DNA of 64,000 bases, taken from contig NC_043007.1 of the NCBI RefSeq assembly GCF_006345805.1, positions 56,358,001 through 56,422,000 on the forward strand, written 5' to 3'. The translations under genes and the position numbers were made by a program. Source of the DNA: Octopus sinensis (taxonomy: Eukaryota). This document shows positions 4,091 to 62,728 of this stretch, piece after piece. The notes below the pieces were generated by a model, which saw only the letters and a program-made list of their open reading frames with translations, made no database searches and had not been told where the DNA came from. Numbering within the stretch: the first letter of the stretch is position 1; every line of letters begins with the position of its first letter.

Positions 4091-6151
4091 TTTAGTTTGG
4101 TTCAGGTTCGGTCTTACTCCTGGTAGGATTTATGTGGGTAGCGGGTTACTGCTTAGGTATCCACAAGTTTTCATCTGTCTTTCACGTGCTTAGAACCTTC
4201 TTGATAATCCTTGCTTTCCTTAAGAGACAAACTTTCTGTAGGAGCACTACCAGGAATTCTATTCCTTCGGCCGTTTGTCTATATCTTTACTTACACTTCT
4301 GAACACACCAATTATTACAGGCACGATCTATACTGTTCTCATGCTCCAAATTCTTCCTATTTCAAATTTTAAGAGATTGTATTTTTCTTGTTTGTTTTTC
4401 GTTCTCTTTCTTTACGATCCTGGAATCAAACGGGCATGATGGGTCGATAAGTAAGCAACTTAGCTTTTCCTTATCTATAATTGTTATGTCCAGTTTATTA
4501 TATTCTAACTTCTTGTCCCACAAAATCTTATATTTCTCCGACTCCAGTACGCTTTCGACTCGATGAATGTACCATGTGTTTCCAGCTTCAAATTCCCATT
4601 TCTGGTACAGTTTCCAGTGTAAAGCTTTTGCAACTTGGTTGTGCCTCCATCTCTTATATTCTTCCTGTGACAACTTGGGGCATTCTGTCACAATATGTGC
4701 CACTGCCTCGTTCCAAGTTCCACAAACTCTACATTTTTATGAAATATTCTCTCTCTATATATTTTTTCTCAAGTTGTTTGTTTTTATTGCTTGATTTTGG
4801 GCTGCTACAATTAGGCTCTTTTTAATTGCTCCCTTTTTTTTAACCAAGCTCACGATTTTGTTCTACATACGTCTTCAGTGGCTCCCCAAAATTTGCCATG
4901 CAGAGGTGTCTTTTCAATCTGTCTGACGTACTCTCTTTCATTCTTGTCTTTTTCTCTTATTAAGTGCTTGATCACCTGTTCTTTATTCACTTTCTTTGGT
5001 AGTTTTTCTGTGCTGCTCACTAAATACTCTACTAGATTTTTTGTTGCATTTGTACATATTCTTCTACTGCTATTAAGCCTTATCCACCCTGCTCTCACCT
5101 CAAGTCCAACTGGTTGATATCAGTTTTCCATACATTGTCAGCAACGTTTTTTTCTGTCAAGTTTCTTTATATTGTCTATAATTCCAACGCCATAACTGAT
5201 TAATGATATTGCTCTTGAATTTATTGCTTCAATAAGATTTTTTGAATTCAAATTTGACTGCAATAATTTTCTTACTCTCCTTGTGTACTTCCTACTGGTG
5301 ATTCGTTTCATTTCTTCATTTTGTTACTTTCGTCTGCTCCCAGTATTCCCAAGTACTTATACCGCTGTCCTTTCTCAACCGCTCTCATTGTTTGCCCATT
5401 TGGCATTTCAATTCCCTGGTTTCTTTCAGACTTCCGCGTTTCATTTTCAATATAGCGCACTTTTCTATCCCAAATTCCATACCTACGTCATTTGAGAAAA
5501 TACGGATTGTATGTACAAGACTTTCAAGTTGTTTTTCATTTTTCGCATAAACATTTATATCATCCATGAAAAGGAAATGATTTATCCCACCATTTCCTTT
5601 TCCCAAATCGTAAGCAATTTAAACTTTTTGTAGTATCATAATGAGCGGTGTCATGGCCAATACGAGTAGTAATCGAGAAAAACTACTACCTTGGAATATT
5701 CTACATCTGATGTTCACTTTTCCGAGTTTTTATTTTCTTCCAATCAATTCAGTATTCCAATGTTTCATACTTTCATTAAGCATGTTCTCGAAGTTTTTTT
5801 CTATTCCAAACATGCTCATTGTTTTACTTATCCAACCGGGAGGGACCATGTCATATGCTTTTTTTTCCGTCAATCTACGTCTACAATTTCTAATTACCAT
5901 TTTATTAACTAATAAGTGATCTTTTGTTACCCTAATTTGTTTCCTACATCCTTTCTGTTCTTCTGGTAGTGGATTGTTACGTTCCAGATGATTCTATAAC
6001 TCTTCCGCTAATGCACCGGTCATAAGCTTCCACATAAGTGGTAAACAGGCTATAGGTCGAAAATTTTATGCCAAGTTCTCTGTCAAGTGCTCCTTGAGGC
6101 ATAGCAACGTTCATCCACTTGTCATCCAGGCTATCGTCCAGTTGTGCAGCG
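4091..6151 (-). mobile_element. Degraded R4/Dong-type RLE retrotransposon, 5'-truncated
   Basis: Fragmented motifs NFRPIACLP, PEEQKGC, FLFMDD, FGIEKC, KTPLHG, HIVTECP..RH, LLIDPSCPFD..KENEK. (TTA)n on both sides (4077-4090 and 6152-6223). Confidence 0.85.
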
Positions 6152-15201: not shown

Positions 15202-17232
15202 TATATATATATATATGAGTGTGTGTGTATGTGTGTGTGTTAGATTGTTATATCTCAACAGAAATGAGATCTCACAAAATCTCTCGTTTTGTAAAAATTT
15301 TGCCTAACCATTCAACATAGGCAAAAATAAGTTGAATTGATCTTCTGAAACTAATAGCTTTCGGTCGTGTTCAATAATCGCCTGATTTAGCAGATGTCGT
15401 TTTATTAACATTAAGATGACACTCATACATCAATTCAAACTTCTAAATCACTATGTTCGCATCAGTCATACTCCTGCAGTATAATAATGGCCACACCATT
15501 ACATTCTATATAATAGAAATAATAACATCATTTTCTTAACTTCTCTAACTTATATGATACAAGAGTTTTCTCTTTTTTATCTCACAAGTCTGAACAGTTC
15601 GTTCAGATTTCGCAACCATTTATCTATCAAGTCAATTGTTTATATTATAAAACTTCTCTTAGAATTTCCAGACATAACCCAGCCGAATTTTTGTTTGAAT
15701 AACATTTATGAATGAATGATGAATGTCTGCTAAATAAAGAAATAAGACCTTCTTTCTTTGATAATGGGTTTCTGTGTCTGTAAATCAAAGGGTTTGTTTA
15801 CAAATCCAGTGCCTGATACGATTCTATGCTGTCCACACCCTAATAAATGATGATCTTCAAAACCACTTTTGGTTATGAAGCCATATAAACTCAGCTGCCC
15901 TATATTTCTTAAGGCTGAGCTACTGGTTGAAACTAGTAACATCAGATAGGCGCTGTGTGTTCTCACAGATATCACTGACTGAAGACATTTATTTTCCGAA
16001 ATAAAAAAAATAAGCGTAAAAAGACATTTTGATAACAATGGCCATACGTAATAGAATGCACGAGAATCAAATCGTTCTCAGCCTTATTTACATAGTAGAT
16101 AGGCTTATCATAGCTATACATTAATGAAGGATGTTTACAGGAGAAATAATTTGACCTACAGAATTTTGTTTTCTTCTCTGGCAAAGGATATAAACTTCAC
16201 CATTTGTGACTCGTTGAAGTGGGCACTTAGAGAAACTTGAAATACTCAGACATCAGTTGGTGGCATGAGACACCTAAGTGTTCTCACAAGAAGTATATTC
16301 ATCTCTGTCCATAGATTATTACTCTCAGTCAATAAAATACATCCTTCACTAAAAACAGCCTCCATGAAAGTCTCAGTAACTTTAAACATTTTGCATTGCG
16401 CCACCGTTTAAGAAGTTGCTGACACAGAATTCCATATTCTAAACGATTTGGCAATGAACTTACTTCATTTAAATGCAATAAATCATTCTTCAGTGTTTGT
16501 GAATTTCCGACGTAACGTACATGGTGGGTTGGTAGCGGGTGAAGAAAATAGATTTTATTTCATTGGTTGCTATTCATAAAAGTTGTCAGAACTCTTCTGT
16601 AAGACATCGCGATGTCAACCTGAAAGCCAAAGTCGAACGGAAAAATTCTCAACCCAGCTGGATATTTAATACGTTGTTTGCTTTCATACCACAGCTTAAC
16701 TGTAAACATTGAAGATAGTTATGTTGAACAGCGGTTCAAGTACTGTCCTGGGTGTATATTGAATCAATCATAAATCTCTAAGAAGACCACGTTTCTGAGT
16801 TCAAATCTCGTTAAAGTTGACGGTTTCAATTTTTAAATTTAATAGTCTTGACAAAATTGTAAACCGTTTTGTCTTAGCAGTTTAATTAAAATAATCTTTT
16901 ACGAGATATAATATCAAAATATTGTATACTAGCGGGACGCGTGAATATTTTTCGGAATTAATGGTAAACCTATTAAGTTATTTCTGAAAACTTTATCCAC
17001 AAAACCTGAAAGTGTAGCCTTTGTTGTGTCTGTATAGAAAGATAGTCATTAATCTGCTAGTCATTGAAAAGTGAAAGAAATTGGAATACGATGATTACTT
17101 ATCAGTTGATTTATTCAGTTATATATAAAAATAATGAGGGAGATAAATTAATATTAATTTTAATATCAATTTAAAACCAGTAGTCCAGCATACAAAAAAT
17201 CTGAGAAGTCAGAGAAAATTCTAATATATGTG

Positions 17233-17433
17233 TATATTGGCAGGGCAAGACTGCTAGGTAGTTGGCCGTATGCTAGAAATAGATCATCAACGATCAAAAC
17301 TACAAAGAAAGTTCTCTAGAGGAAAAATTCAGCGAACACCAGAACCAAATTTGGCGAGCAGGACAGATGAAAATTTATGATCGTTGATGATCTATTTCTA
17401 GCATACGGCCGACTACCTAGCAGTCTTGCCCTG

Positions 17434-17441
<8 letters not shown>
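17233..17441. repeat. 64-bp inverted repeat (one mismatch), 81-bp spacer
   Basis: 17233-17296 versus 17378-17441. Confidence 0.9.
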
Positions 17442-17468
<27 letters not shown>

Positions 17469-26224: not shown

Positions 26225-26700
26225 GCTCATAATACACGGACAACGACGGATGCATTGCTCAAACGACCTTAACATTAGCTTCAAGGTTCATCCAAGACTG
26301 GGACCACGGGCCATACATCCCCTGCCCAATTCAAGATCACAACATACATGTACACTGCAACATAATTTCTTTTCCTCAACAGGCCCTGCCCTATATAACA
26401 TTGTCCCGAGGGAGATCAAAGAGGAAAAGGATCCCATCAACCTAAACGGAGTCTGGATAGATTCCTTCAAAGAATACCAGATAAGCCACCCATAATTGGA
26501 TACAACTCACCCAACAAGAACTCACTACTTGAACAAAACTTGATACAACTCACCCAACAAGAACTCACTACATGAACAAAACTTGACTTAAACAAAACTT
26601 GACTTAAACAGGATTCGGATAATCCTATCAGGTGGTGCTATTAAGTTAGACATGGCCTGGACCAATCTTTGGTCGAAACATATCTAAGTTATCTAAGTTA
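26225..26700 (+). mobile_element. APE-type LINE (CR1/L2/Jockey-group-like) 3' fragment
   Basis: GPALYNIVPREIKEEKDP, then after a frameshift SLDRFLQRIPDKPPIIGY..NKNSL. Terminal hairpin GACCA-atctt-TGGTC and (TAAGTTATC)2 tail. Internal 43-bp tandem duplication at 26499-26584. Confidence 0.55.
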
Positions 26701-26701
26701 T

Positions 26702-26732
<31 letters not shown>

Positions 26733-26733
<1 letters not shown>

Positions 26734-27180
26734 ATGAGGGAGATAAATTGAATATTAATTTAATATCAACTTAAAACCAATAGCCTAGCATACAAAAATC
26801 TGAAAAATCAGAGAAAATTCTAATACATGTGTATATTTGAAGAGCAAACCACTATGTGGTCGGCCGTATGCTAGAAGTAGATCACCTGCGATCAAACTAC
26901 AAAGAGAGGAATGTTCTGTAGAGGAAAATTCAGCGGACACCAGAACGAAATGCGGACAAGACAGATGAAAATTAAATTTAAAAAAAAACAGAATTACTCA
27001 CAGACCGGTGGTTTCGCCTATTAACGAATGAATCATTTATGTAATCCATTGTCCATAGGCTCGTCAGTGTGGTCGTTCCATAGGTAATGCAATTTGTAAA
27101 GCTAACCACCAGTATTCTGCATAAAACCATGGTTTTAAATTGATATTGATTAAATTAACATTCAATTTATCTCCCTCATT
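26733..27180. mobile_element. About 450-bp element with 45-bp terminal inverted repeats carrying a hammerhead motif (Penelope-derived or MITE-like); partial copies at 17130-17375 and 27329-27540
   Basis: AATGAGGGAGATAAATTGAAT...ATTCAATTTATCTCCCTCATT; internal sequence shared with the 17.1-kb and 27.4-kb copies. Confidence 0.75.
26999..27071 (-). ncRNA. Type I hammerhead ribozyme motif (canonical core, GUC site)
   Basis: Minus strand: CACA-CUGACGA-GCCUAU...AUAGGC-GAAA-CCACCG-GUC-UGUG. Stem I 4 bp, stem II 6 bp perfect, short stem III. Activity not shown. Confidence 0.75.
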
Positions 27181-27389
27181 ATTTAAATGATAAAATAAAT
27201 ATGTTCTCTAATAGGCAGCATTAACTGCAGTAAATTATTTGCTGCGGTTTTTGTTTCCGGAATTTTAGCGCGCCAGAACTAAGACATTTGAAATTAACAC
27301 CAATGTAATTGGTGAAGCTAAGCACGTGTCTGTTTTTATGCGGAATACTGGTGGTTAGCTTTACAAATTGTATTACCTATGGAATGACA

Positions 27390-27461
27390 ACACTGACGAG
27401 CCTACGGACAATGGATTACATAAGTGATTCATTCGTTAATAGGTGAAACCGCCGGTCTGTG
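27390..27461 (+). ncRNA. Type I hammerhead ribozyme motif, inverted sister copy
   Basis: ACA-CUGACGA-GCCUA...UAGGU-GAAA-CCGCCG-GUC-UGU; stem III region ACCGCCGGU is self-complementary. Confidence 0.72.
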
Positions 27462-27563
27462 AGTAATTCTTTTTTTTATTTAATTTTCATCTGTCTTGCC
27501 CGCATTTCGTTCTGGTGTCCGCTTCAAATATACACATGTCTGGTGTCCGCTTCAAATATACAC

Positions 27564-27623
<60 letters not shown>

Positions 27624-28652
27624 CAGACATGCAGGAAGTAAATAGACACCTTTAATTTAGTACGCAAAGCGAACAATTGAAATTTAATCGATAGGTAGGA
27701 CTACATACTTTAGTATTTAGTTGACATTCGCTTACCACTATTTAATTAAGAAAATATTTTTGGCATTCAACCGATGAGCTTTGTGATTGCCTCTTGTGGA
27801 ATTTCTGACCGATTTTCACGCAACAATTGAAACAACTCATCTTTAGATTTAGTTTCTGTCGAGTTTTTTGTATAGCTCTATCTAGTATGCTCCAAAGATT
27901 TTCAATTGGGTTCATGTCAGGAGATTGGCTCGGCCAAGGAAACCTTTTGACCCCATCTTCTGTCAGCCATTGTTGACTCCTTTTCGCTGTGTGGCATGGA
28001 GACCCATCTTCCATGAATAAAAATTCATTTATCGTTATGATATCGTATGAATACATCGGAAGTAGTCCTTGCTTAAGTATATTGACGTATTTTTCAGGGT
28101 TTATGGTTCCAACACATTCGATCAGCTCAAAACGACCATTGCTGGTGACAGCTCCCCATACCATTACAGAGATACTGCCATGTTTCACCGTTGGTTGGAG
28201 TCGTTTCAAATCACATTCTTGATTGGGAAGCCTCCAGCCATAAACACGTCCACTGTCTGAAAATAATGCAAATCTGGATTCATCTGAGAAAATCACTCTA
28301 TCCCAAAATGAACTGGATTTTTCTGACATCTCTTTAGCCCAAACCTTTCTTTTCATGATATTAATTGGTTGAATGAGAGGTTTTCTTCTAGCTGCTGTCC
28401 ATAATACCCAAGCATGTGCGCATATGTAACACACGTTCTTGGACTAACTTCTATATGTTTTGCAATGTCAGAAGCCTTCGAACGGAGTTCGTTTTCCACA
28501 ATTCTCTTCAAAGCAAAGTTTCCTTTCCGAGGGCCCAGGTCGGCCGGGACGAGAATCTATTGATTCTTTTCCTTGGCTTTTGAACTGCACTATAATTCTA
28601 TTAACAGTACACAAGAGGAATTTGAAGATATTCGTCAATTTCTGTCTCCCTC
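27624..28652 (-). mobile_element. Tc1-family DNA transposon, decayed (DD34E transposase pseudogene), one TIR retained, 5' part lost
   Basis: ORF 27742-28434 has VIFSDESRF, VMVWG, FMEDGSPCH and WPSQSPDMNPIENLW. TA followed by TIR CAGACATGCAGGAAGTAAATAGACACC at 27624. Confidence 0.9.
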
Positions 28653-29796: not shown

Positions 29797-30079
29797 TCTT
29801 TTTCTACTGCATGTTTGTTACAGTCACTTGCAGAGACACACCAAGTGTCCTGGGGCGAGTGAAAGGATAAGAGATATTACAGTATGGCTGAAGGTTTGGG
29901 GAGAGGAAGTAGCAAACTATCTTCATGTAATACAGTATAGACATTTAAATGGTTAGGGTTCTTCTAAGGATGTGGGGTATTACCTAGACAAGTCCGACAT
30001 TCCTTTTTTGTATCATACCTAGTTCACATACAAACAGGAACAGTTCTCGTTTTAAGATGCCATATGTTTTGTATTTCAG
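29797..30079 (-). mobile_element. R4/Dong-type 3'-end-only insertion (about 280 bp)
   Basis: Clear similarity to 36020-36350 (same 3' UTR: TTTGTTACA.TCACTT..GAGACACA..AGTGTCCT.GGGCGAGTGAA...ACATTTAAATGGTTAGGGTT). (TTA)n on both sides. Confidence 0.75.
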
Positions 30080-36764: not shown

Positions 36765-37552
36765 ATAAATTATCTATTTTATATGGACAATCTGAAACTG
36801 TTTGTCAGAAATGACCAAGAACTAGTAGGGCTGCCAACATCTGTTAAAGAGTTTAGCAATGGCACCAGGATGGATTTTGACCGCGATGAGTGTGGTAAAG
36901 CAGCTTTTGTAAGAGGCAAACTCAGACAAACAGCTTCCATTAAAATAGATACCAACGCTACCATCAAGGAACTTGACCCACAAGAAAAGTATGAATACCT
37001 TAGGATAAACGAAGAAGATGGTATGCAACAAGCTACTATGAAGGAATGAAAAGATAAAAGAAGTACTACAGGAGAATAAGACTTATATACTAAAAACTGA
37101 ATTCAACTCCAAATATCGCATCGAAACTATTAACACGCGGGCACTTCCTGTAGTCCAATACAATTTTAACATCATTAACTGGAATTTTACAGAGCTCCGA
37201 TGCTTGGACAGGAAGACAAGAAAACTAATGACATCTAAGAACATGCACCACCCAGACGTTGATCGTCTGTACCTATCTAGAAGTAATGGGGGAAGAGGAA
37301 TAATGCAGGTAGAAATGTGCTATAAGACCACAATAGTAATGAACAGGTACTTATCTAGTACAGAGGACTATACGCTGCGACTTGTGTGCAAGCACGAAAG
37401 CAGCAAAATCACATTCTATTGGCAAGGAAACTTGTAAGTTCGCAAGGCAGCTTGGTATTAATCCTGAATTAGATGAAGAACCTGAAACTACTGCCATCAA
37501 ACAAACAAAACAGATCAAGCAGACTGCAAAAAGAACGGGCAGAAACAAATTG
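36765..37552 (+). mobile_element. R4/Dong-type RT/thumb segment in opposite orientation (inverted 5' part of the same insertion)
   Basis: INYLFYMDNLKLF..ECGK..YEYL, LDRKTRKLMTSKNMHHPDVDRLYLSRSNGGRG; ends at (TCA)/(TTA)n. Confidence 0.8.
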
Positions 37553-37564
37553 TTATCATCATCA

Positions 37565-38659
<1,095 letters not shown>

Positions 38660-40999
38660 CAGTAGTTTTATTTTTATAGCGTGCTTTCACTTCACTACCG
38701 AGCGCAGCTCTGTGTGCCTTGGGTATGTGCTGTGATTTGTTGTGATGCTCTGATGGTTATTGTATGGAAAGTGCTCTGCGTAGGATGTATGCAGTGCCTA
38801 GTAGTGCAATTTTCTGTATGATATATGTGTTTGTAAGTCCTGGTGTTTTTGTTATGTATTTGTCTGAGTATTTTTTTATCATGCCTAATGCACCTACTAT
38901 GATAGGAATTGTTTCTGTTTTCAGATTCCACATTCTAGTTATCTCTATTTCCAGGTCTTTGTATTTTGAGAGTTTCTCCATTTCTTTTAGAGACACGTTG
39001 TCATCTGCCGGTATTGATACATCAATTAGAAAGCATTTTTTTTCTTCATGATCTCTGACAACTATATCTGGTCTGTTGGCCTTAATTTCTCTATCTGTGT
39101 GTATCGGCATATCCCAGAGTATGGTTGCTTTCTCGTTTTCTGTAACCTTTTCTGGTGTGTGCCTATACCATCTTTTTCTGTTGTTATTCCATAATGTTGG
39201 CATAGCTTCCAGTGTATGTAGGTCCCAATTCTGTCGTGTCTGTGAATATATTCCTTCTTAGCCAGGACTGGGCAGCCAGATATATGATTTATTGTTTCTT
39301 GTCCATCCCCACATATTCTGCAGTTACTTGTAATATTTCTTTTCATTATATGTTTTTGGTAATTTCTGGTGGGGAGCCTTTGGTCTTGTGCTGCAATTAA
39401 AAATCCCTCTGTTTCTGCTTTGAGTCCTGAGCTTCTCAACCATTGCTGGGATCTTTCTTTGTCTATTTCTTTTGCGTTTAGTTTAGTGCAGTATTTACCA
39501 TGAAGGGGCTTTTCTTGCCATCGTTTTATCATGGTTCGTTGCTGTTCTATTTTTAGTTTGGATTTCATTTGTTTTATAGCTTTTGTTGTTTCTTCATCAT
39601 CTTCTTCTTCTTCTTCTTCGTGTTTATTAGGTGGTATGATTTCTTGTTTGTATTTGTCAGCTTCCTTAAATACTGAGAACAGTTTTTTGTTTTGCTCGTG
39701 TTTTGCTGCTATCTGGATCAGTTTTCCTTCCTTCTGAAGTAGGTATTTTTGCAGTCCTATGGTGGTTATTTTATAGTAGTTTTCCAGCTGTGTAAGGCCT
39801 CTACCACCTTCTATACGTTGTATATATAGTCTTTCTATGTCAGATTTTGGGTGATGCATCCTAGATCCTGTCAGTATTTTTCTTGTTTTCCTATCTATTT
39901 TGGACAGTTCATTTCGTGTCCAGTTAAGGATATTGTAGCTGTAACTTATAACTGGGACAGCTAAAGTGTTGATACCTATTATCTTGTTTTTAGCATTGAG
40001 CTCTGTTTTTAGTATTGATCTAACTCGTCTATAATATTCTTTTTTTATTTTCTCTTTCATTTGTGTGTGTTGTGTCTTATCTAGTTCATGGATTCCTAAG
40101 TATTTGTAAGTTTGGCATTGGTCTAATTCTTTTATTTCATTGGTTTTATCTAGTGTGATGTTGTTACTTTTAACTAGTTTTCCTCTTTTCATGGTTACTT
40201 TGGCGCATATTTCTAATCCAAATTTCATATCTATTTCTTTGGTAAATGCATGAACTGTCTTTAATAGTGTTTCCAGCTGTTTGTCATTTGCAGCGTATAG
40301 TTTTAGGTCATCCATATGTAAAAGGTGGCTGATCGTTTTGCCGTAACATTTATATCCGCATCCAGTTCTATTTAGCATATCAGATAGAGGTGACAGTGCC
40401 AAGCAGAAAAGGAGTGGAGAGAGCGTGTCTCCCTGGAATATTCCTCTTCTGATGGGGATGTCTTTGGTTTTCATGAGTCCCTCTTTTGTTGGAGATGTAG
40501 GACTGTTTGCCATTTATTCATAGAGTGCTCTATGAATTTTATGATTGTTGGTGCTACTTTGTTAATGGCTAGTGTTTCAAGGATCCATGTGTGGGGGATG
40601 CTATCAAACGCCTTTTTGTAGTCAATCCAGGCCATACTGAGGCCTTTCTTCTTTCTGTGGCTGTCTTCAGTTACGGCTTTATTAACCATTAGTTGATCTT
40701 TACAGCCATATGAGCCTTTGCGGCATCCTTTCTGCTCTTCTGGGAACAGTTTGTTTTCGTCCAGGTGCTTGTTCAGCCTTTGCGATATCACTGCAGTATA
40801 TGCCTTGAACATAGTAGGGAGGCAGGTTATTGGTCTGTAGTTTTCTGGTTTTGCTGTTTCATTTGATTTGGGAATTAAGATGGTTTTCCCCTTCGTGAGC
40901 CATTCAGGCATTGTCTCTGGCTCTGCTAGTATGCTGTTAAAGTTTTCAGCCAGCTTTTTGTGCATTCCTGTTAGATATTTCAACCAGAAGTTGGGGATC

Positions 41000-52794: not shown

Positions 52795-53278
52795 ACACTC
52801 CCTCCTTGACTCTCCCGTTGCTCACACGTGACCAGCGGTCATCTTTCGTTTCCTAACTTGAATTTCTTTCTTTCCGTTCGTTTAGCTACAGGGATAGGAC
52901 GCATTCTTGCCTCTCTCCTGTCATTATGGCTTAACAGCCCTTACCGTTTGTTTTCACTGTCCTGATTTTGTTACCAGCTTTGAACCTCCGCAAATCCCAA
53001 ATATTATTTAATTTGCTTTGCTGGAGCAACTGTTCTGACGAAGACACATTTTGTCGTAATGCTCGAAATGCGGAGTAGATAACACAAAGCGATTGTTCTT
53101 TATGTTGCATGTCTTGTTTTTCCATTTGTTTCTTTCTTTATTCGCAAAGTTCGTTATGCATTTATTCGTATTTCATGTTCTCGTTTTCCTGTTGTTTACG
53201 TTTTTTGACGTCCATATATGCTTATGTATATACATATATATGTATGTACATGTATGTATGTATGTATATATGCATAGA
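52560..53278 (+). repeat. Interspersed non-coding repeat (Penelope-pLTR-like family P); other copies at 8044-8900 (-) and 9720-10170 (+), partials at 23835-24065 and 17900-18185
   Basis: Shared blocks GAAC.CCATGCATCC.TTTCCAAGTAAGTTTT, CTCACACGTGACCA, AAATCCCAAAT..TTTGCTTTGC, CGAAA..CGGAGTAGATAA, TGTTCTTTATGTTGC. The block order is permuted between copies. Confidence 0.7.
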
Positions 53279-53279
53279 G

Positions 53280-54680
53280 GTGATTGAAGACACAAACAAA
53301 AAAACAATCACATACAAAGTTTTCGATAGGAAACTGAAAAAAATGACAAATGCCACACCCCAACAGTTAGAGATAGCTCTAAAGCCCATTTGGGCCCAAA
53401 AGAGCTACGTAACCAAGGGGAAGCGTTTCGGAACCGTGGACGTTCGCTTCCCAACAGAGGAGCTTGCAAGGGCGAACGCCATTTCGCCCTTGCAAACTGA
53501 GAATTTGTTACTAGTCCCAACCCACCTCGGGCGAAGAGTAACAAAAATAAAGATCGACCTTGTCCCCCCTGAACTAGATATGTCATGGCTGGTGGCAGCT
53601 GTCCTCTATGATATAGAGGACACTACCACCATTCTAGATGTCAGGAGAGTGAGGGAGAAAAACTGGTTGGGGATGGGAGTGCTGCTTCTTGCGCAAATTC
53701 AGCAAGAAAATATCAGCAAAGTCCCTGATTTCGTGAGTTTGCCGGACGGCACCAGGCTAAACGTTGCTGTGGAGGGGCGAAAGCCAAAATGTTTCCTCTG
53801 CAGCAGCGAAAGCCACTTAAAGAGGGACTGCCCCATTCAAAAAAAGAGGATGGAGGAGTATAACAAGAGGAAGCAACAACAACAACAACAACAACAACAG
53901 AAACAACAACAACAGAAACAACAACAGAAACAGCACGAAACACCAAAAGCTGCCACACCACCAACACCATCACCAGCACCAAGACGAACAACACCACCTC
54001 CAACAACAACAACCACCACCAAACCAACACCGACACCAGTACCTCGAAGGTCGACAGCAGCAACATCAACAGCAACAGGAGCAGCGGCACCACCGATACC
54101 GGCGGAACCAAAAACCTTTCGTCTTGCTACTGAAGCAGACCCCTCAACCATTCCTTTGCCGGATGAAGAGTCGGATTGTGCGAGTTCTGATTCCAACAAA
54201 GGAGAATGGAGCATAGTGCCTCCAAAGAAGAAAAGGAGGAAAAAACAAAAAGATTTACAGGGGAAGCACGAACAAATAGTGCTTCCAAACATCAACAACA
54301 ACATCAACGACAACACACATTCACAACAACAAACAACAACAACAACACTTTCGACACCACTACTGCCACTGCCACACACACAAACACACACAGACACAAT
54401 TACATCAATAAACACAAAGAACCAAAAACTAGTGGAGTACTTAAAAAACAAAACTAGTACAAATATAACCGATTTCATCATACCAACACAAAACACACCA
54501 CCAGCACACATTCTCACAATAAAAATAAATGCAAAAACATATGATGAAATCAAACAAATATTCCCTAACGATGTGGGATCGCTAGGGAAAAGTTTCTCGA
54601 AGAAACTTTATAAAAACATTGTGGAAGCACCTGTGCAAAAGCACAAGGGAGCCACCCCCACCACCAACAACAATAAGTAG
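53280..54680 (+). CDS. L1/Tx1-clade LINE ORF1 (gag-like), 5'-truncated: N-terminal domain, CCHC zinc knuckle, polyQ/Pro/Thr linker, basic patch, C-terminal domain
   Basis: Open frame ending at 54680, 37 bp before ORF2, with CFLCSSESHLKRDC (CX2CX4HX4C). Homology to the second ORF1 at 63-64 kb extends upstream of the first internal ATG (53343). The track's N-terminus (53109 to about 53275) is flanking repeat and microsatellite. Confidence 0.88.
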   Translation: MIEDTNKKTITYKVFDRKLKKMTNATPQQLEIALKPIWAQKSYVTKGKRFGTVDVRFPTEELARANAISPLQTENLLLVPTHLGRRVTKIKIDLVPPELDMSWLVAAVLYDIEDTTTILDVRRVREKNWLGMGVLLLAQIQQENISKVPDFVSLPDGTRLNVAVEGRKPKCFLCSSESHLKRDCPIQKKRMEEYNKRKQQQQQQQQQKQQQQKQQQKQHETPKAATPPTPSPAPRRTTPPPTTTTTTKPTPTPVPRRSTAATSTATGAAAPPIPAEPKTFRLATEADPSTIPLPDEESDCASSDSNKGEWSIVPPKKKRRKKQKDLQGKHEQIVLPNINNNINDNTHSQQQTTTTTLSTPLLPLPHTQTHTDTITSINTKNQKLVEYLKNKTSTNITDFIIPTQNTPPAHILTIKINAKTYDEIKQIFPNDVGSLGKSFSKKLYKNIVEAPVQKHKGATPTTNNNK

Positions 54681-54717
54681 AGCCTTTTTTCTCCTTTTTT
54701 TCCCCTACTTTTGAGAC

Positions 54718-57700
54718 ATGGCAAATCTTAGAATCGGTTGCTTGAATGTGAGAGGCCTCGGGTCACCTTGGAAACAGGGTCACCTGTTAAACTACCTGAG
54801 GTTTCATGATGTGGATGTAGCAGCCATCAGTGAAACCAGGCTCTCCGACCCGCAGGAACTCGCAGCCCTTTTCGGCGGATACGAGATATTTCTATCTCCG
54901 TGTCGGCCGGGAGCGGGCGGTGGTGGTACTGCGGTGTTGTTTCGGAAGGGCCTGGACCTGAAAATAAGGACAGTCTTCTTGGATCCGGAAGGTAAGTTGG
55001 TGGTCCTCGACGTCGACGGTAGTGACGGCGGTGCTTTCAGACTGCTGGCTGCCTACGCTCCGACAGGAGCAGGGCAGTCGGATTATTTCAAACGTCTGGA
55101 AGTTTTCCTGGGAACGTCACGCACTCTAGTGCTAGTTGGGGATTGGAACGCTGTCTTAGACGAACGTTTCGATCGGGTGGGCAGGGGAGCGTCTGATGGG
55201 AGAGGGGGAGGGTGCAAGAGCCTCGCCAACCTACTCGGCCGCTTTCAGCTGTCCGACAGGTTTCGACTAGACAACCCGAATGTGCCAATGTGGACTTGGA
55301 CAAACCGCATCGGGTCGTCTAGATCGTACTTAGATAGAGTGTTTTGTAGGCCAGCGGATAAGGACAGCGTAGGGTGTCCACAATTCCACCTAGTCGAATA
55401 TACGGACCACAAATTAGTGATCTGTACGGTCGACTTAGATAGGCTACATAGACAGGGACCCGGCTACTGGAAGCTGAACGCGTCATTAACGGCGTGCAAA
55501 GCTTACAGAGACCGGATTAGTTTACTAGTTAAGCGGGCGCTCACGGGGGCAATCATCAACAACAACTGGTGGTTTGCCCTCAAGAGAGCAATTAGAGTAG
55601 AGTCGATTAGGTATAGTAAGACTCTAGCTATCGAACGTAGGAAGAGAGAGCGGGATTTAGTTAAGAAACTAGACGAGGCTCTTGACACTGGCATCACGAC
55701 CGACGTGTTGGCGGCAAGGTTGGCCCTCGACCAACACTTCGACGCCAAACACGAAGGCTGCGTTGTCAGAGCTAAGGCACGTTCGCTAAGCGGGGAGGGG
55801 ACTAGAGCCGCTCGATGGGCCCGCGTGGCGGAGGCGAAGCGAGGCAACAGAGCAACCATTCGGTCTTTGGTGGACCAGAACGGGCGCGAGGTTACCGAAC
55901 CGAAGCAGATGTGTACGGTGCTTCAGCGGCACTTTACTCAACTGTTTGGGACGAGCGGTGGAACGGACAACGGTGCAGACTTCGGTGTGTACCTGGACGG
56001 CCTACCGCAACTCTCGGACAGCGAGGCAGAGTGCTGCGAAGGACCGATATCTGCCTGGGAAGTACAGGAAGCGATGAAGAGTTGCACGAGAGGTAGATCG
56101 CCGGGTTTGGATGGTCTGCCCTACGAGCTTTACTTTTCAATGCCAGACTTGTTTGCGGACCTGTTGGCAAACGTCTACTGCAACTGGCAGCAAAACGGGA
56201 GAATTCCTACTTTTGTCTGTCGAGGGGTGGTGGCTTTGCTAAAGAAGGACCCAAACAAGGGGGACGTTATAGGGAATTTCCGGCCCATCACTCTGCTCAA
56301 TGCAGAGTTGAAGATTTTGGCCAAGGTGCTAGCCAAGAGATTGGCGCTTGTCGTGGACAAGCTGGTCGGCAAGACGCAGACATGCGCCGTGCCGACCAGG
56401 TCGATACACGACAACCTCCATCTCATGCGCTACATCATAGAGAGGGTGGGTAACGATGCTGGTGCGGGTGGGGCTTTGATCAACTTGGATCAGAGTAAAG
56501 CCTTCGATAGGGTCGACCATCGGTACCTGGCAGCTGTCCTCAAGGCAGCCGGCTTCGGTCCAGTCTTCCGCGGGTGGATAGCTGCTTTATACAGCAACAT
56601 CTGCTCGGTGATACGGGTGAACGGTCACCTTTCGGAACCGTTCGTCATCTCGCGTTCGGTCCGCCAAGGATGCCCTCTCTCCTCCCTCTTGTACATTTTG
56701 ACTCTCGAGCCATTACTGCGCAAGTTGGAGGCTTTGAGGGGTATCCCGCGCGATCTAGGAGGCGGAAACAGCGTGTCTGCTTATGCCGACGACGTCACCG
56801 TGGTGGTGTCGAGCCACAGGCACATTGGCCTGATTGGCGAGACGCTAAACCAGTACGAAGCGGTGACAGGGGCAAAGATTAACGCGGAAAAGTCTGTGGG
56901 CTTGCAGCTGGGCACCTGGAGAGGCAAGCCCATGCCGTCCAACAGCGTCGTAGGGCGCTGGACAGACGGACCCGTTAAACTGCTCGGGGTCTGGTTCGGT
57001 CCGGACCTCCAGGTGGATAAGAACTGGGAAGAGGTGACGAGCAGGGTGGCACGTCTCACCCAGAAATGGGCCGAGAGGAAGCTGTCCCTGAAAGGTCGAG
57101 CGGAGGTGGCGAATGCGTACATCGCATCCGTCATCTATTACCGCTTGACCGTCGTCCCTTGTCCCGACCGCTGGTTGGCCAAGCTGGTACGCCTGCTCTT
57201 CGACTTTTTGTGGAAGGGTCAGGTGCCACTGGTCAGGCGATCCATCTGCTGTCAACGACCGCTGAACGGAGGCTTTGGAATGCCGTGGTTGCTGTTGCGC
57301 AGACATGCGCTCAGGCTGCGGCATCTCAAGCGTTTCCTAGACGGTGAACAGGTGTGGTCGTCTTTTGTCAGACGCGATTTTCCGCAGCTCGTCTCTTTGA
57401 CGGAGCTGCAGACCTTGATCAAACGTAGACCGAGAAAGGGCGCTTGGCACCTCGAGTGCCGTCAAGCCCTCTCCGCCCTCCGCCAGGCGGGCAATGCGAT
57501 CGGTTACAGCTCCACTCTAGCGTTCTATAGAGGGTTAGTGGAGGAAAAATGCGACGACGTTCTCGGGGAAACTCTAGGCGTTGAAGACGACGAACTGAGC
57601 GGTCTGTTCGGGAGGACTTTCAGGCCGGGGCCGATGGATAATTTCCAGAGGTCTCTCGCCTGGCAGTGCTACCGAGGGGCTCTGCCTGTTCGAGATAAAC

Positions 57701-58149
57701 TCTACCGGCACGGAAGTGCCGTCAGCCGGGCCTGCCCGAGGTGTTGCCAGGACGACGAAACCGTTCTGCACGCACTCATCCAGTGCCCGAGTATTGCTGA
57801 AATATGGGTTTATGTCGAACAGCTACTGTCACGTGTAGGACGGATCCGACTATCGGCCGAATCCATAGTGAAGATTGCCCCGCCGACCTCCTTTAACAAG
57901 GAGGGCGAGGCTGTTTTCTTGTGCCTAGTGGCTGTGGCGAAAGAGGTCGTGTGGTGGACTCGTTTGAAAGGGCTAAAGACAGACACTTTCCTCTTTGGTC
58001 AAGGCCTCATCAACTTTTTCAAGTTTCACTTGAAAAGGAAGATGAGGTTAGAGAGGAAAGTGCTGTCCGATAGCAAGTTTTATGAAAGGTGGGTGAATTG
58101 TGCGAGACTGGCCTGTATAAATGGACCAGTTCTCAGGTTTCGCCTGTGA
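54718..58149 (+). CDS. L1/Tx1-clade LINE ORF2: APE endonuclease + reverse transcriptase + C-terminal Cys/His motif, 1143 aa, uninterrupted
   Basis: The translation has APE motifs (LNVRGL, ISET, YAP, GDWN, SYLDR, TDH), RT motifs (PGLDG, FRPITLLN, DQSKAFDRV, QGCPLS, YADD) and C-terminal CPRC...ETVLHALIQC. No stops or frameshifts. It is much more GC-rich than the flanks. Confidence 0.97.
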   Translation: MANLRIGCLNVRGLGSPWKQGHLLNYLRFHDVDVAAISETRLSDPQELAALFGGYEIFLSPCRPGAGGGGTAVLFRKGLDLKIRTVFLDPEGKLVVLDVDGSDGGAFRLLAAYAPTGAGQSDYFKRLEVFLGTSRTLVLVGDWNAVLDERFDRVGRGASDGRGGGCKSLANLLGRFQLSDRFRLDNPNVPMWTWTNRIGSSRSYLDRVFCRPADKDSVGCPQFHLVEYTDHKLVICTVDLDRLHRQGPGYWKLNASLTACKAYRDRISLLVKRALTGAIINNNWWFALKRAIRVESIRYSKTLAIERRKRERDLVKKLDEALDTGITTDVLAARLALDQHFDAKHEGCVVRAKARSLSGEGTRAARWARVAEAKRGNRATIRSLVDQNGREVTEPKQMCTVLQRHFTQLFGTSGGTDNGADFGVYLDGLPQLSDSEAECCEGPISAWEVQEAMKSCTRGRSPGLDGLPYELYFSMPDLFADLLANVYCNWQQNGRIPTFVCRGVVALLKKDPNKGDVIGNFRPITLLNAELKILAKVLAKRLALVVDKLVGKTQTCAVPTRSIHDNLHLMRYIIERVGNDAGAGGALINLDQSKAFDRVDHRYLAAVLKAAGFGPVFRGWIAALYSNICSVIRVNGHLSEPFVISRSVRQGCPLSSLLYILTLEPLLRKLEALRGIPRDLGGGNSVSAYADDVTVVVSSHRHIGLIGETLNQYEAVTGAKINAEKSVGLQLGTWRGKPMPSNSVVGRWTDGPVKLLGVWFGPDLQVDKNWEEVTSRVARLTQKWAERKLSLKGRAEVANAYIASVIYYRLTVVPCPDRWLAKLVRLLFDFLWKGQVPLVRRSICCQRPLNGGFGMPWLLLRRHALRLRHLKRFLDGEQVWSSFVRRDFPQLVSLTELQTLIKRRPRKGAWHLECRQALSALRQAGNAIGYSSTLAFYRGLVEEKCDDVLGETLGVEDDELSGLFGRTFRPGPMDNFQRSLAWQCYRGALPVRDKLYRHGSAVSRACPRCCQDDETVLHALIQCPSIAEIWVYVEQLLSRVGRIRLSAESIVKIAPPTSFNKEGEAVFLCLVAVAKEVVWWTRLKGLKTDTFLFGQGLINFFKFHLKRKMRLERKVLSDSKFYERWVNCARLACINGPVLRFRL

Positions 58150-61701: not shown

Positions 61702-62728
61702 TCAGGCTGAGTAAAAAGTAAGGAACATTTTAAAACGCGAAAATTTCATAACAATATATTTCAACAATGCGGAAATCTTATTCATCAAAGTAAATACCAT
61801 TACAATCAACATATTTTTACCAACGAATTACGGCATTGTTTATTCCGGTAACATAGAAATCTGGAGTTCTAGAGCTGATGAACTCTTTGAACGCACTTTC
61901 AGCCGCGGTTTGATTTTTGAACACCTTCTTGCACAGGAAACCATCAAGGTGCTTGAAAAAGTGGTACTCGGTAGAAGAAAGATCTGGGGAATAAACTGGG
62001 TGAGGAAGAACTTTGTAGCCAAGTTCCCTCAACTTTTGGAGCATCATTAGTGAAACGTGCGGTCGAGCATTGTCATAAAGAATGATTGGCCCTCTTATGT
62101 TGACCAGTCTGGGACGGAGGAGTAGCAATTTTTCGTTCATTTTGGCAATTTCATGACAATATGTTTCTGCAATAATAGTTTTCCCGAGTTTTAAGAAGTT
62201 ATAGTGGATGAGTCCAGCAGTACACCACCAAACAACAGTCACCATAACCTTCTTGTTGAAGAGCTCGGGTTTAGGGAAGATTTTCGGTGCTTCATTTTGA
62301 TCCAACCACTGCTAAAAACGATTTTTATTATTGTTCATAATCCATTTTTCATTGCAATACGGTCGAGAAATTGATTGGTTTGGTTATGAAGAAGCGACGA
62401 GAAAATTTCATATCGGCGCATTTTCTGATTTTCAATCAAATCGTATGGTACCCATTTATCGAGCTTTTATAATTCTCCGATCGTATGCAAATGGTTGCAC
62501 GCAGTTTTCTGACTAACTTGAAATTCTTTTGCCAGTTCTCGAGTAGTTTTACGTGGATCTTCCTCAGTAACGGTCTTTAATTGACTGTCATCGATGACAG
62601 ATAGGCGTCCACTACGCTCACGATCTTCAAGGCTCTGGTCTCCACTGCGAAACGTTTAAACCATTTTCTTGAATAGCAAAATTGCTCGAATATCGCGCTT
62701 TGACAGTTCCATTTCAGATGATTATAAC
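61702..62728 (-). mobile_element. mariner transposon, decayed; 5' end interrupted by the ORF1-only retroelement
   Basis: ATG at 62712 (MELSKRDIRAILL), KWVPY, KKVMVTVVWW, ILYDNARPH, HPVYSPDLSSTEYHFF (ORF 61817-62305). Confidence 0.88.

What the first reader, a model, noticed from the sequence alone, without database searches (positions are those of the whole stretch)
26733..27560. Canonical GUC hammerhead inside a TIR-bounded element, plus an inverted second copy 320 bp away
Seen: a 450-bp element with 45-bp terminal inverted repeats looks like a MITE, but contains CACA-CUGACGA-GCCUAU..AUAGGC-GAAA-CCACCG-GUC-UGUG on the minus strand. A diverged inverted partial copy (27329-27540) keeps the full core, with a G-U substitution that preserves stem II and a palindromic ACCGCCGGU stem III. 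Inference: this is a PLE-type element (inverted pLTR-like ends) rather than a DNA MITE, and it is the best ribozyme candidate in the window. A read-through transcript would also form a hairpin of about 200 bp.
Basis: partly seen in the sequence, partly recalled or inferred. Interest (0 to 1): 0.7.

Follow-up and report, generated by a model that had tools for sequence, protein, structure and literature searches.

The report
Hammerhead ribozyme in truncated retroelement copies
Two old, head-to-head fragments of a small repeat sit inside a TA microsatellite in an animal genome and each carries a hammerhead self-cleaving RNA motif; this is most likely ordinary debris of a Penelope-like retrotransposon, a class already known to scatter such ribozymes by the thousand, and not a DNA-transposon MITE.

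Summary
A complete type I hammerhead motif lies on the minus strand at 27071-26999: all invariant core bases, helix I 4 bp, helix II 6 bp plus a long extension, helix III 3 bp. A weaker inverted copy lies at 27390-27460 (+). Shuffled windows give a motif as good as copy A 0.003 times per window, but Rfam models do not reach threshold, and the two copies show no extra conservation of the ribozyme.

The "450-bp TIR element" is probably not a MITE. The window holds two loci of this family (26735-27566 and 17135-17445). Both have the same build:
- two copies lie head-to-head with their 3' ends pointing outward;
- the 5' ends vary;
- there are two alternative 3' ends (…CTCCCTCAT, or 90 nt further in);
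- (TA)n flanks the locus, and at the main locus an A(TA)10 direct repeat lies on both sides.

The right "TIR" is a 53-bp inverted copy of the element's own 3' end, joined at an 8-nt microhomology. This matches published Penelope-like element insertions: inverted 5'-truncated copies, priming on both strands, internal start of reverse transcription, AT-rich or (TA)n targets, and a hammerhead near the 3' end.

No RT/GIY-YIG ORF is present, no further copies could be retrieved, and cleavage is untested. It is a new member of a known kind, of modest interest.

The parts
26699..26733 (.). Left flank, (TA)7 A (TA)10. Candidate target microsatellite and left copy of a long target-site duplication.
   Evidence: The same A(TA)10 recurs in direct orientation at 27603-27623.
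26735..27129 (-). Copy A. This is a 5'-truncated unit (sense coordinates s62-458) that ends in the family's canonical 3' end ...TTTATCTCCCTCAT next to the (TA)n.
   Evidence: The 3' end is shared with copy C (88.8% identity) and with A'.
26999..27071 (-). Hammerhead motif A, type I. CACA / CUGACGA (27067-27061) / helix II GCCUAU...AUAGGC with 45 nt between the two core halves / GAAA (27015-27012) / ACC-ACC-GGU / C17 at 27003. The predicted cut is between 27003 and 27002.
   Evidence: The hammerhead fold is 2.3 kcal/mol above the MFE. Rfam gives only 17.6 bits.
27130..27182 (+). A', an inverted copy of the last 53 nt of the unit (s406-458). The A/A' junction is the palindrome TAAAACCA|TGGTTTTA, because s62-69 and s406-413 are both TGGTTTTA.
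   Evidence: 95.6% identity to the 3' ends of both A and C.
27183..27330 (+). 148-bp spacer between A' and B. It is unique in the window, non-coding and of unknown origin. It could be the 5' part of a ~545-nt unit, filler DNA, or old flank.
27331..27566 (+). Copy B. It consists of s62-259, then a deletion of s260-339, then s340-366 and s340-368. It ends 90 nt short of the canonical 3' end, directly in (TA)n.
   Evidence: 94.8% identity to A over aligned bases.
27390..27460 (+). Hammerhead motif B. The core is intact (CUGACGA 27393-99, GAAA 27445-48, C17 27457), but helix I is 3 bp, the 10.1-11.1 pair is G-U, and the sixth helix II pair is C.A. Helix III is ACCGCCGGU.
   Evidence: The hammerhead fold is 5.3 kcal/mol above the MFE.
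27511..27566 (+). Exact 28-bp tandem duplication, TCTGGTGTCCGCTTCAAATATACACATG x2, spanning B's deletion junction.
   Evidence: family D5.
27567..27623 (.). Right flank, (TA)18 A (TA)10. Candidate right copy of the target-site duplication. It is followed at 27624 by the end of a Tc1-like element.
17135..17375 (-). Copy C at the second locus. It covers s218-458, has the canonical 3' end, and is 5'-truncated downstream of the hammerhead, so it carries no ribozyme.
17378..17445 (+). C', an inverted fragment (s297 to about s368) head-to-head with C. It ends in (TA)15 (17438-17467) at about the same internal position as B.
   Evidence: 98.4% identity to C, 82.5% to A.

Best explanation
The region is one old, composite insertion of a short non-coding retroelement. 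The element is either the 3'-terminal (pseudo-LTR) part of a Penelope-like element or a non-autonomous derivative of one. It inserted into a (TA)n microsatellite and carries the type I hammerhead ribozyme typical of that class.

Shown here:
- The hammerhead core and its three helices are present.
- The window holds five fragments of one repeat family at two loci.
- Both loci have the same head-to-head build, with 3' ends pointing outward and 5' ends varying.
- There are two alternative 3' ends: s458 (...CTCCCTCAT) and about s368 (...ACACATG).
- (TA)n lies at the outer ends.
- A direct A(TA)10 repeat encloses the whole A+B composite.
- The central junction uses an 8-nt microhomology.
- The two arms within each locus are each other's closest relatives.

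Inferred mechanism:
1. A PLE RT/GIY-YIG protein encoded elsewhere nicked the AT-rich target on both strands.
2. It primed reverse transcription of the element RNA on both strands, starting at either of two sites in the RNA.
3. The two 5'-truncated cDNAs were joined in the middle by microhomology. This produced the inverted pair and, as a by-product, the 53-bp 'TIR'.

The ribozyme's job, by analogy with other PLEs and retrozymes, would be to cut longer-than-unit transcripts of master copies. In these dead copies it is a passenger. Copy A still has an intact motif, while copy B is eroding, mostly through CpG transitions. If the locus is transcribed through, it forms a ~200-bp dsRNA hairpin.
For: Hammerhead motif:
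- All invariant positions are present (C3-A9, G12-A14, A15.1-U16.1, C17), and three helices surround the core.
- A motif of copy A's quality appears 0.0027 times per shuffled window. A dimer-type descriptor gives 0 of 300 shuffles.
- The hammerhead fold of copy A is within 2.3 kcal/mol of the MFE.
- Polarising the A/B differences by CpG decay gives an ancestor with G10.1-C11.1 and the near-palindromic ACCGCCGGU helix III (inference).

Architecture:
- Searches give fragments A (s62-458), A' (s406-458), B (s62 to about s368), C (s218-458) and C' (s297 to about s368).
- Identities are A-B 94.8% and C-C' 98.4%, against A-C 88.8% and A-C' 82.5%. This fits one insertion event per locus.
- The flanks are (TA)7A(TA)10 and (TA)18A(TA)10 in direct orientation.
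- Only one of the two loci has 'TIRs'.

Literature match:
- PMC8557442: PLE insertions are heavily 5'-truncated, often have an inverted 5'-truncated copy next to the upstream pLTR, carry HHRs near their 3' ends, and (Naiads) prefer (TA)n targets so that TSDs are hard to see.
- PMC11167929: a purified PLE protein cleaves and extends both DNA strands, prefers AT-rich DNA, and starts reverse transcription at two internal RNA sites, giving optional terminal 'tails'.
- PMC4209133: PLE hammerheads have a larger helix II and a short helix I. Most are solo motifs from truncated PLEs, and pairs 100-700 bp apart on opposite strands were seen in Schistosoma.
Against: - There is no RT or GIY-YIG coding sequence in or next to the composite. 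A regex screen of all ORFs of 60 aa or more found no GIY-YIG-like motif, and the only additional YxDD fragment (5388-5618) resembles the window's LINE RT.
- There are only two loci, and no copy could be retrieved from any other collection.
- Rfam does not call the ribozyme.
- The ribozyme is not more conserved than its flanks: 5 substitutions in 73 nt inside, against 5 substitutions plus 2 indels in 125 nt outside.
- The two alternative 3' ends are 90 nt apart, whereas published PLE tails are 30-40 bp.
- The 148-bp spacer is unexplained.
- TA lies on both sides of the 450-bp A+A' unit, as a Tc1/mariner MITE would require.
- Helix II, with 45 nt between the core halves, is far longer than in described PLE hammerheads.
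- (TA)n targeting is described for Naiads, which are reported to lack canonical HHRs.
Confidence: 0.6

Rival explanations
1. A DNA-transposon MITE (Tc1/mariner-type, TA target duplication) of ~450 bp with 45-55-bp TIRs. It would happen to contain, or would have captured, a hammerhead-bearing fragment. Copy B and the C/C' hairpin would then be by-products of abortive gap repair.
For: - The inverted termini ATGAGGGAGATAAATT.../...AATTTATCTCCCTCAT are 86-93% complementary.
- TA lies immediately outside both termini of A+A', and outside the left end of C.
- Tc1-like and mariner remnants are present in the window.
Against: - Only one of the two loci has a second TIR. C has an inverted internal fragment instead, and B has no TIR at all.
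- The TA dinucleotides sit in TA-rich DNA and so carry little information.
- The direct A(TA)10 repeat encloses A+B together, not A+A' alone.
- B and C' end at the same internal position in (TA)n.
- The 'TIR' starts exactly at an 8-nt microhomology with the body.
- The neighbouring Tc1-like element ends in CAGACATGCAGG, which is unrelated to these termini.
Confidence: 0.18
2. A remnant of a non-LTR retrozyme: a ~545-nt non-coding unit (spacer + s62-458) that is transcribed from tandem copies, cut by its hammerhead, circularised, and copied back into DNA. A'-spacer-B would then be a preserved unit-to-unit junction. According to a 2026 preprint such retrozymes are themselves non-autonomous PLE derivatives, so this rival overlaps with the best explanation.
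For: - The element carries a type I hammerhead in a non-coding unit. The proposed ~545-nt unit lies above the ~170-400 nt reported for animal retrozyme RNAs, which sit in genomic repeats of up to ~390 bp (PMC7229834).
- A' (the unit's 3' end) is followed after TA by sequence that runs on into B in the same orientation.
- pLTRs and retrozymes are phylogenetically intermingled in Xenopus (bioRxiv 10.64898/2026.07.22.740005).
Against: - There is no head-to-tail tandem of hammerhead-bearing units anywhere in the window.
- The spacer occurs only once, so it cannot be shown to belong to the unit.
- No expression data are available.
Confidence: 0.12
3. The hammerhead is a chance motif in an unrelated interspersed repeat and has never cleaved anything. 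The locus matters only as a long inverted repeat (possible hairpin RNA or fragile site).
For: - Rfam models do not reach threshold.
- Conservation is not higher inside the motif.
- At 0.003-0.035 chance hits per 64 kb, a gigabase genome would hold many accidental matches.
- Helix II is atypically long and helix III is only 3 bp.
Against: - The motif sits in exactly the kind of element known to carry hammerheads (inverted 5'-truncated copies, (TA)n target), which raises the prior a great deal.
- All 13 invariant positions survive in both copies after about 5% divergence.
- The inferred ancestor has the family-typical G10.1-C11.1 pair and a near-palindromic helix III.
Confidence: 0.1

Closest known systems
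Hammerhead ribozymes in the pseudo-LTRs of Penelope-like elements, and their solo or truncated copies (Cervera & de la Pena 2014, PMC4209133)
   Same: - Type I topology.
- Short helix I (4 bp) with a poorly defined distal part, and an enlarged helix II.
- A weak, nearly palindromic helix III that suggests action as a dimer.
- G10.1-C11.1 in copy A.
- Mostly found as single motifs from truncated elements; pairs 100-700 bp apart on opposite strands have been reported.
   Different: - No unpaired nucleotide between A9 and 10.1.
- Helix II is much longer: 6 bp, an internal loop, then 8-10 bp, giving 45 nt between CUGACGA and GAAA.
- A real 3-bp helix III with a 3-nt loop, rather than none.
- No RT/EN ORF has been linked to it.
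PLE insertion architecture and mechanism (Craig et al. 2021, PMC8557442; Frangieh et al. 2024, PMC11167929)
   Same: - Heavy 5' truncation.
- An inverted 5'-truncated copy abutting the unit.
- AT-rich or (TA)n target, with the TSD obscured by the microsatellite.
- Two alternative 3' termini, consistent with two reverse-transcription start sites.
- Both target strands apparently primed.
   Different: - The alternative ends are 90 nt apart, against 30-40 bp 'tails'.
- (TA)n preference is documented for Naiads, which are said to lack canonical HHRs.
- The mechanism here is inferred from two loci only.
Metazoan non-LTR retrozymes (Cervera & de la Pena 2020, PMC7229834; Li, Clavereau & Pollet 2026 preprint)
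   Same: A non-coding unit of a few hundred nt with a type I hammerhead, possibly derived from a PLE.
   Different: Not arranged as head-to-tail tandem repeats in this window. No evidence for circular RNA.
Naiad 'HHR_half_core' cases (PMC8557442, Methods)
   Same: The two halves of the hammerhead core lie 35-50 nt apart in the 3' UTR of a (TA)n-targeting PLE clade. Here the spacing is 45 nt, next to (TA)n.
   Different: No sequences could be compared, because no supplement is held. This is a lead, not a test.
Tc1/mariner-derived MITEs (Stowaway-like)
   Same: A short non-coding unit with 45-55-bp terminal inverted repeats and TA on both sides.
   Different: The second locus lacks the second TIR. 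The copies differ in length through 5' truncation. The larger direct repeat encloses both inverted copies. No cognate transposase was found.

Membership tests
Hammerhead ribozyme (type I) | Invariant core: C3 U4 G5 A6 N7 G8 A9, G12 A13 A14, A15.1-U16.1, H17 | tested here: met
   Both copies read CUGACGA ... GAAA ... U-C.
Hammerhead ribozyme (type I) | Three helices around the core: helix I open, helices II and III closed | tested here: met
   Descriptor helix lengths (I/II/III) are 4/6/3 bp for copy A and 3/5/3 bp for copy B. The constrained hammerhead fold is 2.3 kcal/mol (A) and 5.3 kcal/mol (B) above the MFE.
Hammerhead ribozyme (type I) | Score at or above the Rfam gathering threshold for a hammerhead covariance model | tested here: not met
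   No hit at gathering thresholds. The best match is a partial Hammerhead_3 hit of 17.6 bits against 48.5, for copy A only. The 33-nt insertion in helix II is heavily penalised.
Hammerhead ribozyme (type I) | Helices supported by compensatory changes, or core conserved above background | tested here: inconclusive
   Only two copies exist. There are 5 substitutions in 73 nt inside the motif against 5 plus 2 indels in 125 nt outside. No change is compensatory, and two weaken helices in B.
Hammerhead ribozyme (type I) | Site-specific self-cleavage | not testable with these tools
   Needs in vitro transcription or mapping of 5'-OH ends.
Penelope-like element (PLE) | ORF with a telomerase-like RT and a GIY-YIG endonuclease | tested here: not met
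   There is no ORF longer than 60 aa in the composite. The RTs in the window are APE-type LINEs. No GIY-YIG-like motif was found in the window's ORFs (a weak regex screen). So the element can at most be a truncated or non-autonomous derivative.
Penelope-like element (PLE) | Complex tandem or inverted insertions with 5'-truncated copies (pseudo-LTR structures) | tested here: met
   There are head-to-head 5'-truncated copies at both loci, and the arms within a locus are the most similar to each other.
Penelope-like element (PLE) | Hammerhead motif in the terminal repeat, near the 3' end | tested here: met
   The cleavage site lies about 180 nt and 270 nt upstream of the two 3' ends.
Penelope-like element (PLE) | AT-rich or microsatellite target, and an optional terminal 'tail' from two RT start sites | tested here: inconclusive
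   (TA)n lies at the outer ends of both loci, and A(TA)10 is duplicated at the main locus. The two alternative 3' ends are 90 nt apart, not 30-40.
Penelope-like element (PLE) | Sequence homology of the unit to the 3' region of an autonomous PLE | not testable with these tools
   No eukaryotic repeat library or source genome is available. Pattern scans of other collections gave only chance hits.
Non-LTR retrozyme | Head-to-tail tandem repeats, each with a type I hammerhead | tested here: not met
   The two hammerheads are inverted, and the window contains no direct tandem of the unit.
Non-LTR retrozyme | [quoted passage not shown] | not testable with these tools
   No transcriptome is available.
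MITE (Tc1/mariner-type) | Terminal inverted repeats on every copy, and copies of uniform length | tested here: not met
   TIRs are present only on A+A'. C (241 bp) and B (236 bp) lack them.
MITE (Tc1/mariner-type) | TA target-site duplication | tested here: inconclusive
   TA is present on both sides of A+A', but within TA-rich DNA.
MITE (Tc1/mariner-type) | A cognate DDE transposon with the same termini | tested here: not met
   The adjacent Tc1-like element ends in CAGACATGCAGG, which is unrelated. This could be tested in this window only, not genome-wide.

The most novel reading that the evidence does not exclude
The element is a previously undescribed, non-autonomous derivative of a (TA)n-targeting PLE clade such as Naiad. 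Its hammerhead is genuine despite a 45-nt helix II. In that case the 'half-core' motifs reported in Naiad 3' UTRs would be real, long-helix-II hammerheads that standard descriptors and Rfam models miss. The unit (~545 nt) would be copied from longer-than-unit or circular RNA by priming on both strands at two start sites 90 nt apart.
Probability: 0.15. Interest if true: 0.5.

Novelty: new member of a known kind. Interest (0 to 1): 0.3.

Why it matters
Hammerheads in truncated Penelope-like elements are already known to be abundant in animal genomes, so this finding does not change the picture. It has three modest uses.

1. It is a clean, small example of the PLE "both strands primed, two start sites, microhomology join" architecture that was recently shown in vitro.
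2. Such insertions can mimic a TIR-bounded MITE and mislead repeat annotation.
3. The hammerhead has an unusually long helix II, which current covariance models and descriptors under-score. If it is active, it widens what should be searched for, particularly in PLE clades said to lack hammerheads.

Tried and rejected
- **Rfam.** A gathering-threshold scan of the whole window found nothing. E-value scans gave only a sub-threshold Hammerhead_3 hit, plus microRNA-model hits caused by the (TA)n tract and the long inverted repeat.
- **More copies by translating the element's ORFs.** The word-indexed protein search found no candidate. The exhaustive HMMER search returned two repetitive, irrelevant proteins.
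- **DNA pattern scans.** The metagenome hits (L001-L003) lie in GC-rich bacterial DNA that reads as coding sequence. The viral hits (L005-L007) are one phage sequence, apparently coding, that cannot form a hammerhead. A second pattern, taken from the element body, found nothing in the GTDB genomes or the viral contigs.
- **Identifying the organism.** The intact LINE ORF2 is not on record. Its nearest relative is 73% identical and lies on a 3-kb contig of NCBI assembly GCA_024449705.1. No names were attached to it, and no paper cites that assembly. The taxon stays undetermined; the transposon content indicates an animal.
- **More divergent in-window copies.** nhmmer and sensitive blastn found none beyond the five fragments.
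- **Other hammerheads in the window.** A relaxed dimer-type descriptor found none.
- **Active dimer.** The cofold MFE dimers pair ACCGGU with ACCGGU in a register that does not give an active helix III.
- **Supplement of PMC8557442.** It is not held, so the element could not be compared with Naiad consensus sequences.
- **Bacterial promoter/terminator scan.** Uninformative for this eukaryotic sequence.
Full report
**Context.** The window is AT-rich (about 35% GC), microsatellite-rich animal DNA full of transposon debris:
- an apparently intact APE+RT LINE at 53109-58149;
- a frameshifted LINE RT at 38757-40983;
- a Tc1-like DDE_3 pseudogene at 27742-28434;
- a mariner fragment at 61817-62305.

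The taxon could not be determined. The LINE's nearest database relative is only 73% identical and unnamed.

**Checking the observation.** The sequence described is there.
- On the minus strand, 27071-26999 reads CACA CUGACGA GCCUAU[33 nt]AUAGGC GAAA CCACCGG UC UGUG.
- On the plus strand, 27390-27460 reads ACA CUGACGA GCCUA[35 nt]UAGGU GAAA CCGCCGG UC UGU.
- A hammerhead descriptor I wrote requires the core, helix I of at least 3 bp, helix II of at least 4 bp, and helix III of at least 3 bp including A15.1-U16.1. It finds exactly these two sites in the 64 kb.
- Dinucleotide-preserving shuffles give 0.035 hits per window at these lenient settings and 0.0027 at copy A's quality. A descriptor that requires a self-complementary helix III segment gives 0 of 300 shuffles.
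- Helix II is unusually long: 6 bp, an internal loop, then 8-10 more pairs. The constrained hammerhead fold costs 2.3 kcal/mol over the MFE for A and 5.3 for B.
- Rfam does not confirm the motif. There is nothing at gathering thresholds, and only a local Hammerhead_3 match of 17.6 bits (gathering 48.5) for copy A.
- The inverted repeats are as described, with 40-59-nt 'TIRs' and ~198-nt arms. The read-through hairpin is real on paper, at -366.7 kcal/mol and z = -37.

**Do the two copies argue for selection?** They do not.
- A and B differ by 10 substitutions and 2 indels over 198 nt. Five substitutions fall in the 73-nt motif and five, plus both indels, in the other 125 nt.
- None hits an invariant core base, but only about 0.65 such hits were expected.
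- None is compensatory. In B, helix I loses a pair, 11.1 becomes U, and the sixth helix II pair is C.A.
- Most differences are CpG to TpG or CpA changes, in a window with CpG observed/expected of 0.76.
- Taking the CpG state as ancestral (an inference) gives an ancestor with G10.1-C11.1, a 5-bp proximal helix II, and ACCGCCGGU as helix III. That is a 4+4 palindrome around C.C, the sort of short, nearly palindromic helix III described for animal type I hammerheads that act as dimers (PMC4209133).

**What the element is.** A self-comparison of the window found a second locus of the same family at 17135-17445. I number positions along the hammerhead sense strand as s1-458, where s = 459 - q and q1 is window position 26733. 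The five fragments are:

| Fragment | Sense coordinates | Window coordinates | Strand |
|---|---|---|---|
| A | s62-458 | 27129-26735 | - |
| A' | s406-458 | 27130-27182 | + |
| B | s62-259, then s340-366 and s340-368 | 27331-27566 | + |
| C | s218-458 | 17375-17135 | - |
| C' | s297 to about s368 | 17378-17445 | + |

Five regularities stand out.
1. Both loci consist of two copies head-to-head with their 3' ends pointing outward.
2. The 5' ends all differ, while the 3' ends are of only two kinds. A, A' and C end in ...TTTATCTCCCTCAT. B and C' end about 90 nt further in, at ...ATATACACATG, running straight into (TA)n.
3. The arms within one locus are each other's closest relatives: A-B 94.8% and C-C' 98.4%, against A-C 88.8% and A-C' 82.5%. 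So each locus looks like one event.
4. The outer flanks are TA microsatellite. At the main locus they are (TA)7A(TA)10 on the left and (TA)18A(TA)10 on the right. The same interrupted tract appears in direct orientation on both sides of the whole A+B composite, which looks like a long target-site duplication.
5. It is joined to A exactly where both sequences read TGGTTTTA, giving the palindrome TAAAACCA|TGGTTTTA.

**Comparison with what is known.**
- These regularities are the published signatures of Penelope-like element insertions. Craig et al. (PMC8557442) describe heavy 5' truncation and an inverted 5'-truncated copy often adjacent to the upstream pseudo-LTR. They also describe hammerheads near the 3' ends, an optional terminal 'tail', and a bias for microsatellites ((TA)n for Naiads) that hides TSDs.
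- Frangieh et al. (PMC11167929) showed that a purified PLE protein cleaves and extends both strands of an AT-rich target. It starts reverse transcription at two internal sites of the RNA, which explains optional tails.
- Cervera and de la Pena (PMC4209133) found that PLE hammerheads have a larger helix II and a shorter helix I. Most occur as solo motifs from truncated PLEs, and pairs 100-700 bp apart on opposite strands occur in Schistosoma.
- A 2026 preprint (10.64898/2026.07.22.740005) argues that animal retrozymes are themselves derived from PLE pseudo-LTRs.

**Most likely mechanism (inferred).**
1. An RNA of this family was reverse-transcribed at a nicked (TA)n site from both target strands. 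One reaction started at the RNA's terminal site and the other at the internal TA-rich site.
2. The two 5'-truncated cDNAs were joined by microhomology.
3. The hammerhead would serve master copies by cutting multimeric transcripts. In these copies it is a passenger.

**Caveats.**
- No RT/GIY-YIG ORF lies in or near the composite, so this is at most a truncated or non-autonomous derivative.
- The two 3' ends are 90 nt apart, whereas published tails are 30-40 bp.
- The 148-bp spacer (27183-27330) is unexplained. It may be the 5' part of a ~545-nt unit, in which case A'-spacer-B is a unit-to-unit junction copied from a longer-than-unit RNA.
- (TA)n preference is documented for Naiads, which are reported to lack canonical hammerheads. 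The same paper does mention 'half-core' cases with 35-50 nt between the core halves, and here the spacing is 45 nt. I could not compare sequences.

**Rivals.**
- A Tc1/mariner-type MITE remains possible, because TA lies on both sides of A+A'. It does not explain the second locus, the shared internal end point of B and C', the microhomology junction, or the direct repeat enclosing A+B. The neighbouring Tc1-like element has unrelated termini.
- A retrozyme remnant overlaps with the main explanation but lacks the defining tandem array here.
- A chance motif cannot be excluded on sequence statistics alone at genome scale. The element context makes it unlikely.

**Searches for more copies all failed.** Protein-space searches with the element's ORFs found nothing useful. 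Pattern scans of the metagenome, viral and prokaryotic collections gave only chance hits in what reads as coding DNA, or nothing. The decisive tests therefore need the source genome and a bench assay.

**Verdict.**
With the overlapping retrozyme variant it reaches about 0.7.
- The MITE reading stands at about 0.2.
- This is a new member of a known kind and of modest interest. Its value lies mainly in the unusually long helix II and in being a compact illustration of PLE insertion architecture that imitates a MITE.

Noticed in passing
window 53109-58149 (+): An apparently intact LINE: a 523-aa ORF1-like protein plus a 1143-aa ORF2 (APE + RT + zf-RVT). Its GC content is 50-57% in a 35% GC background. 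The nearest database relative is only 73% identical (NCBI GCA_024449705.1). It is possibly a young or recently acquired element.
   Followed up: partly
window 27624-28434 (-), possibly to ~29817: A Tc1-like DDE_3 pseudogene begins with CAGACATGCAGG immediately after the (TA)10 that flanks the hammerhead locus. A degenerate possible partner end lies at 29806-29817. The same TA microsatellite therefore seems to have been hit by both a DNA transposon and the retroelement.
   Followed up: partly
window 27511-27566: An exact 28-bp tandem duplication spans the internal-deletion junction of copy B, and each repeat ends in ...ACACATG just before (TA)n. It may reflect repeated or stuttering initiation of reverse transcription, or later slippage.
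   Followed up: no
window 26491-26602: A 43-bp tandem repeat (2 copies, 91% identity) and related 17-nt repeats lie just left of the locus. They are unrelated to the element.
   Followed up: no
window 38757-40983 (-) and 5388-5618 (-): Frameshifted RT fragments of a second LINE type (motif ...MDDxKLYA...). There is also a mariner Transposase_1 fragment at 61817-62305 (-).
   Followed up: partly
window 27077-27384: An Rfam MIR2655 model hit (34.7 bits, gathering score 122) and several mir-297/mir-466-type hits at 27545-27636 are artefacts of the long inverted repeat and the (TA)n tract, not microRNA genes.
   Followed up: yes
window 37351-38735: Very long homopolymer-like and trinucleotide microsatellites produce spurious poly-N/I/M/V/Y/H 'ORFs'. 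Similar TA, CA and TC microsatellites are dense across the window.
   Followed up: no
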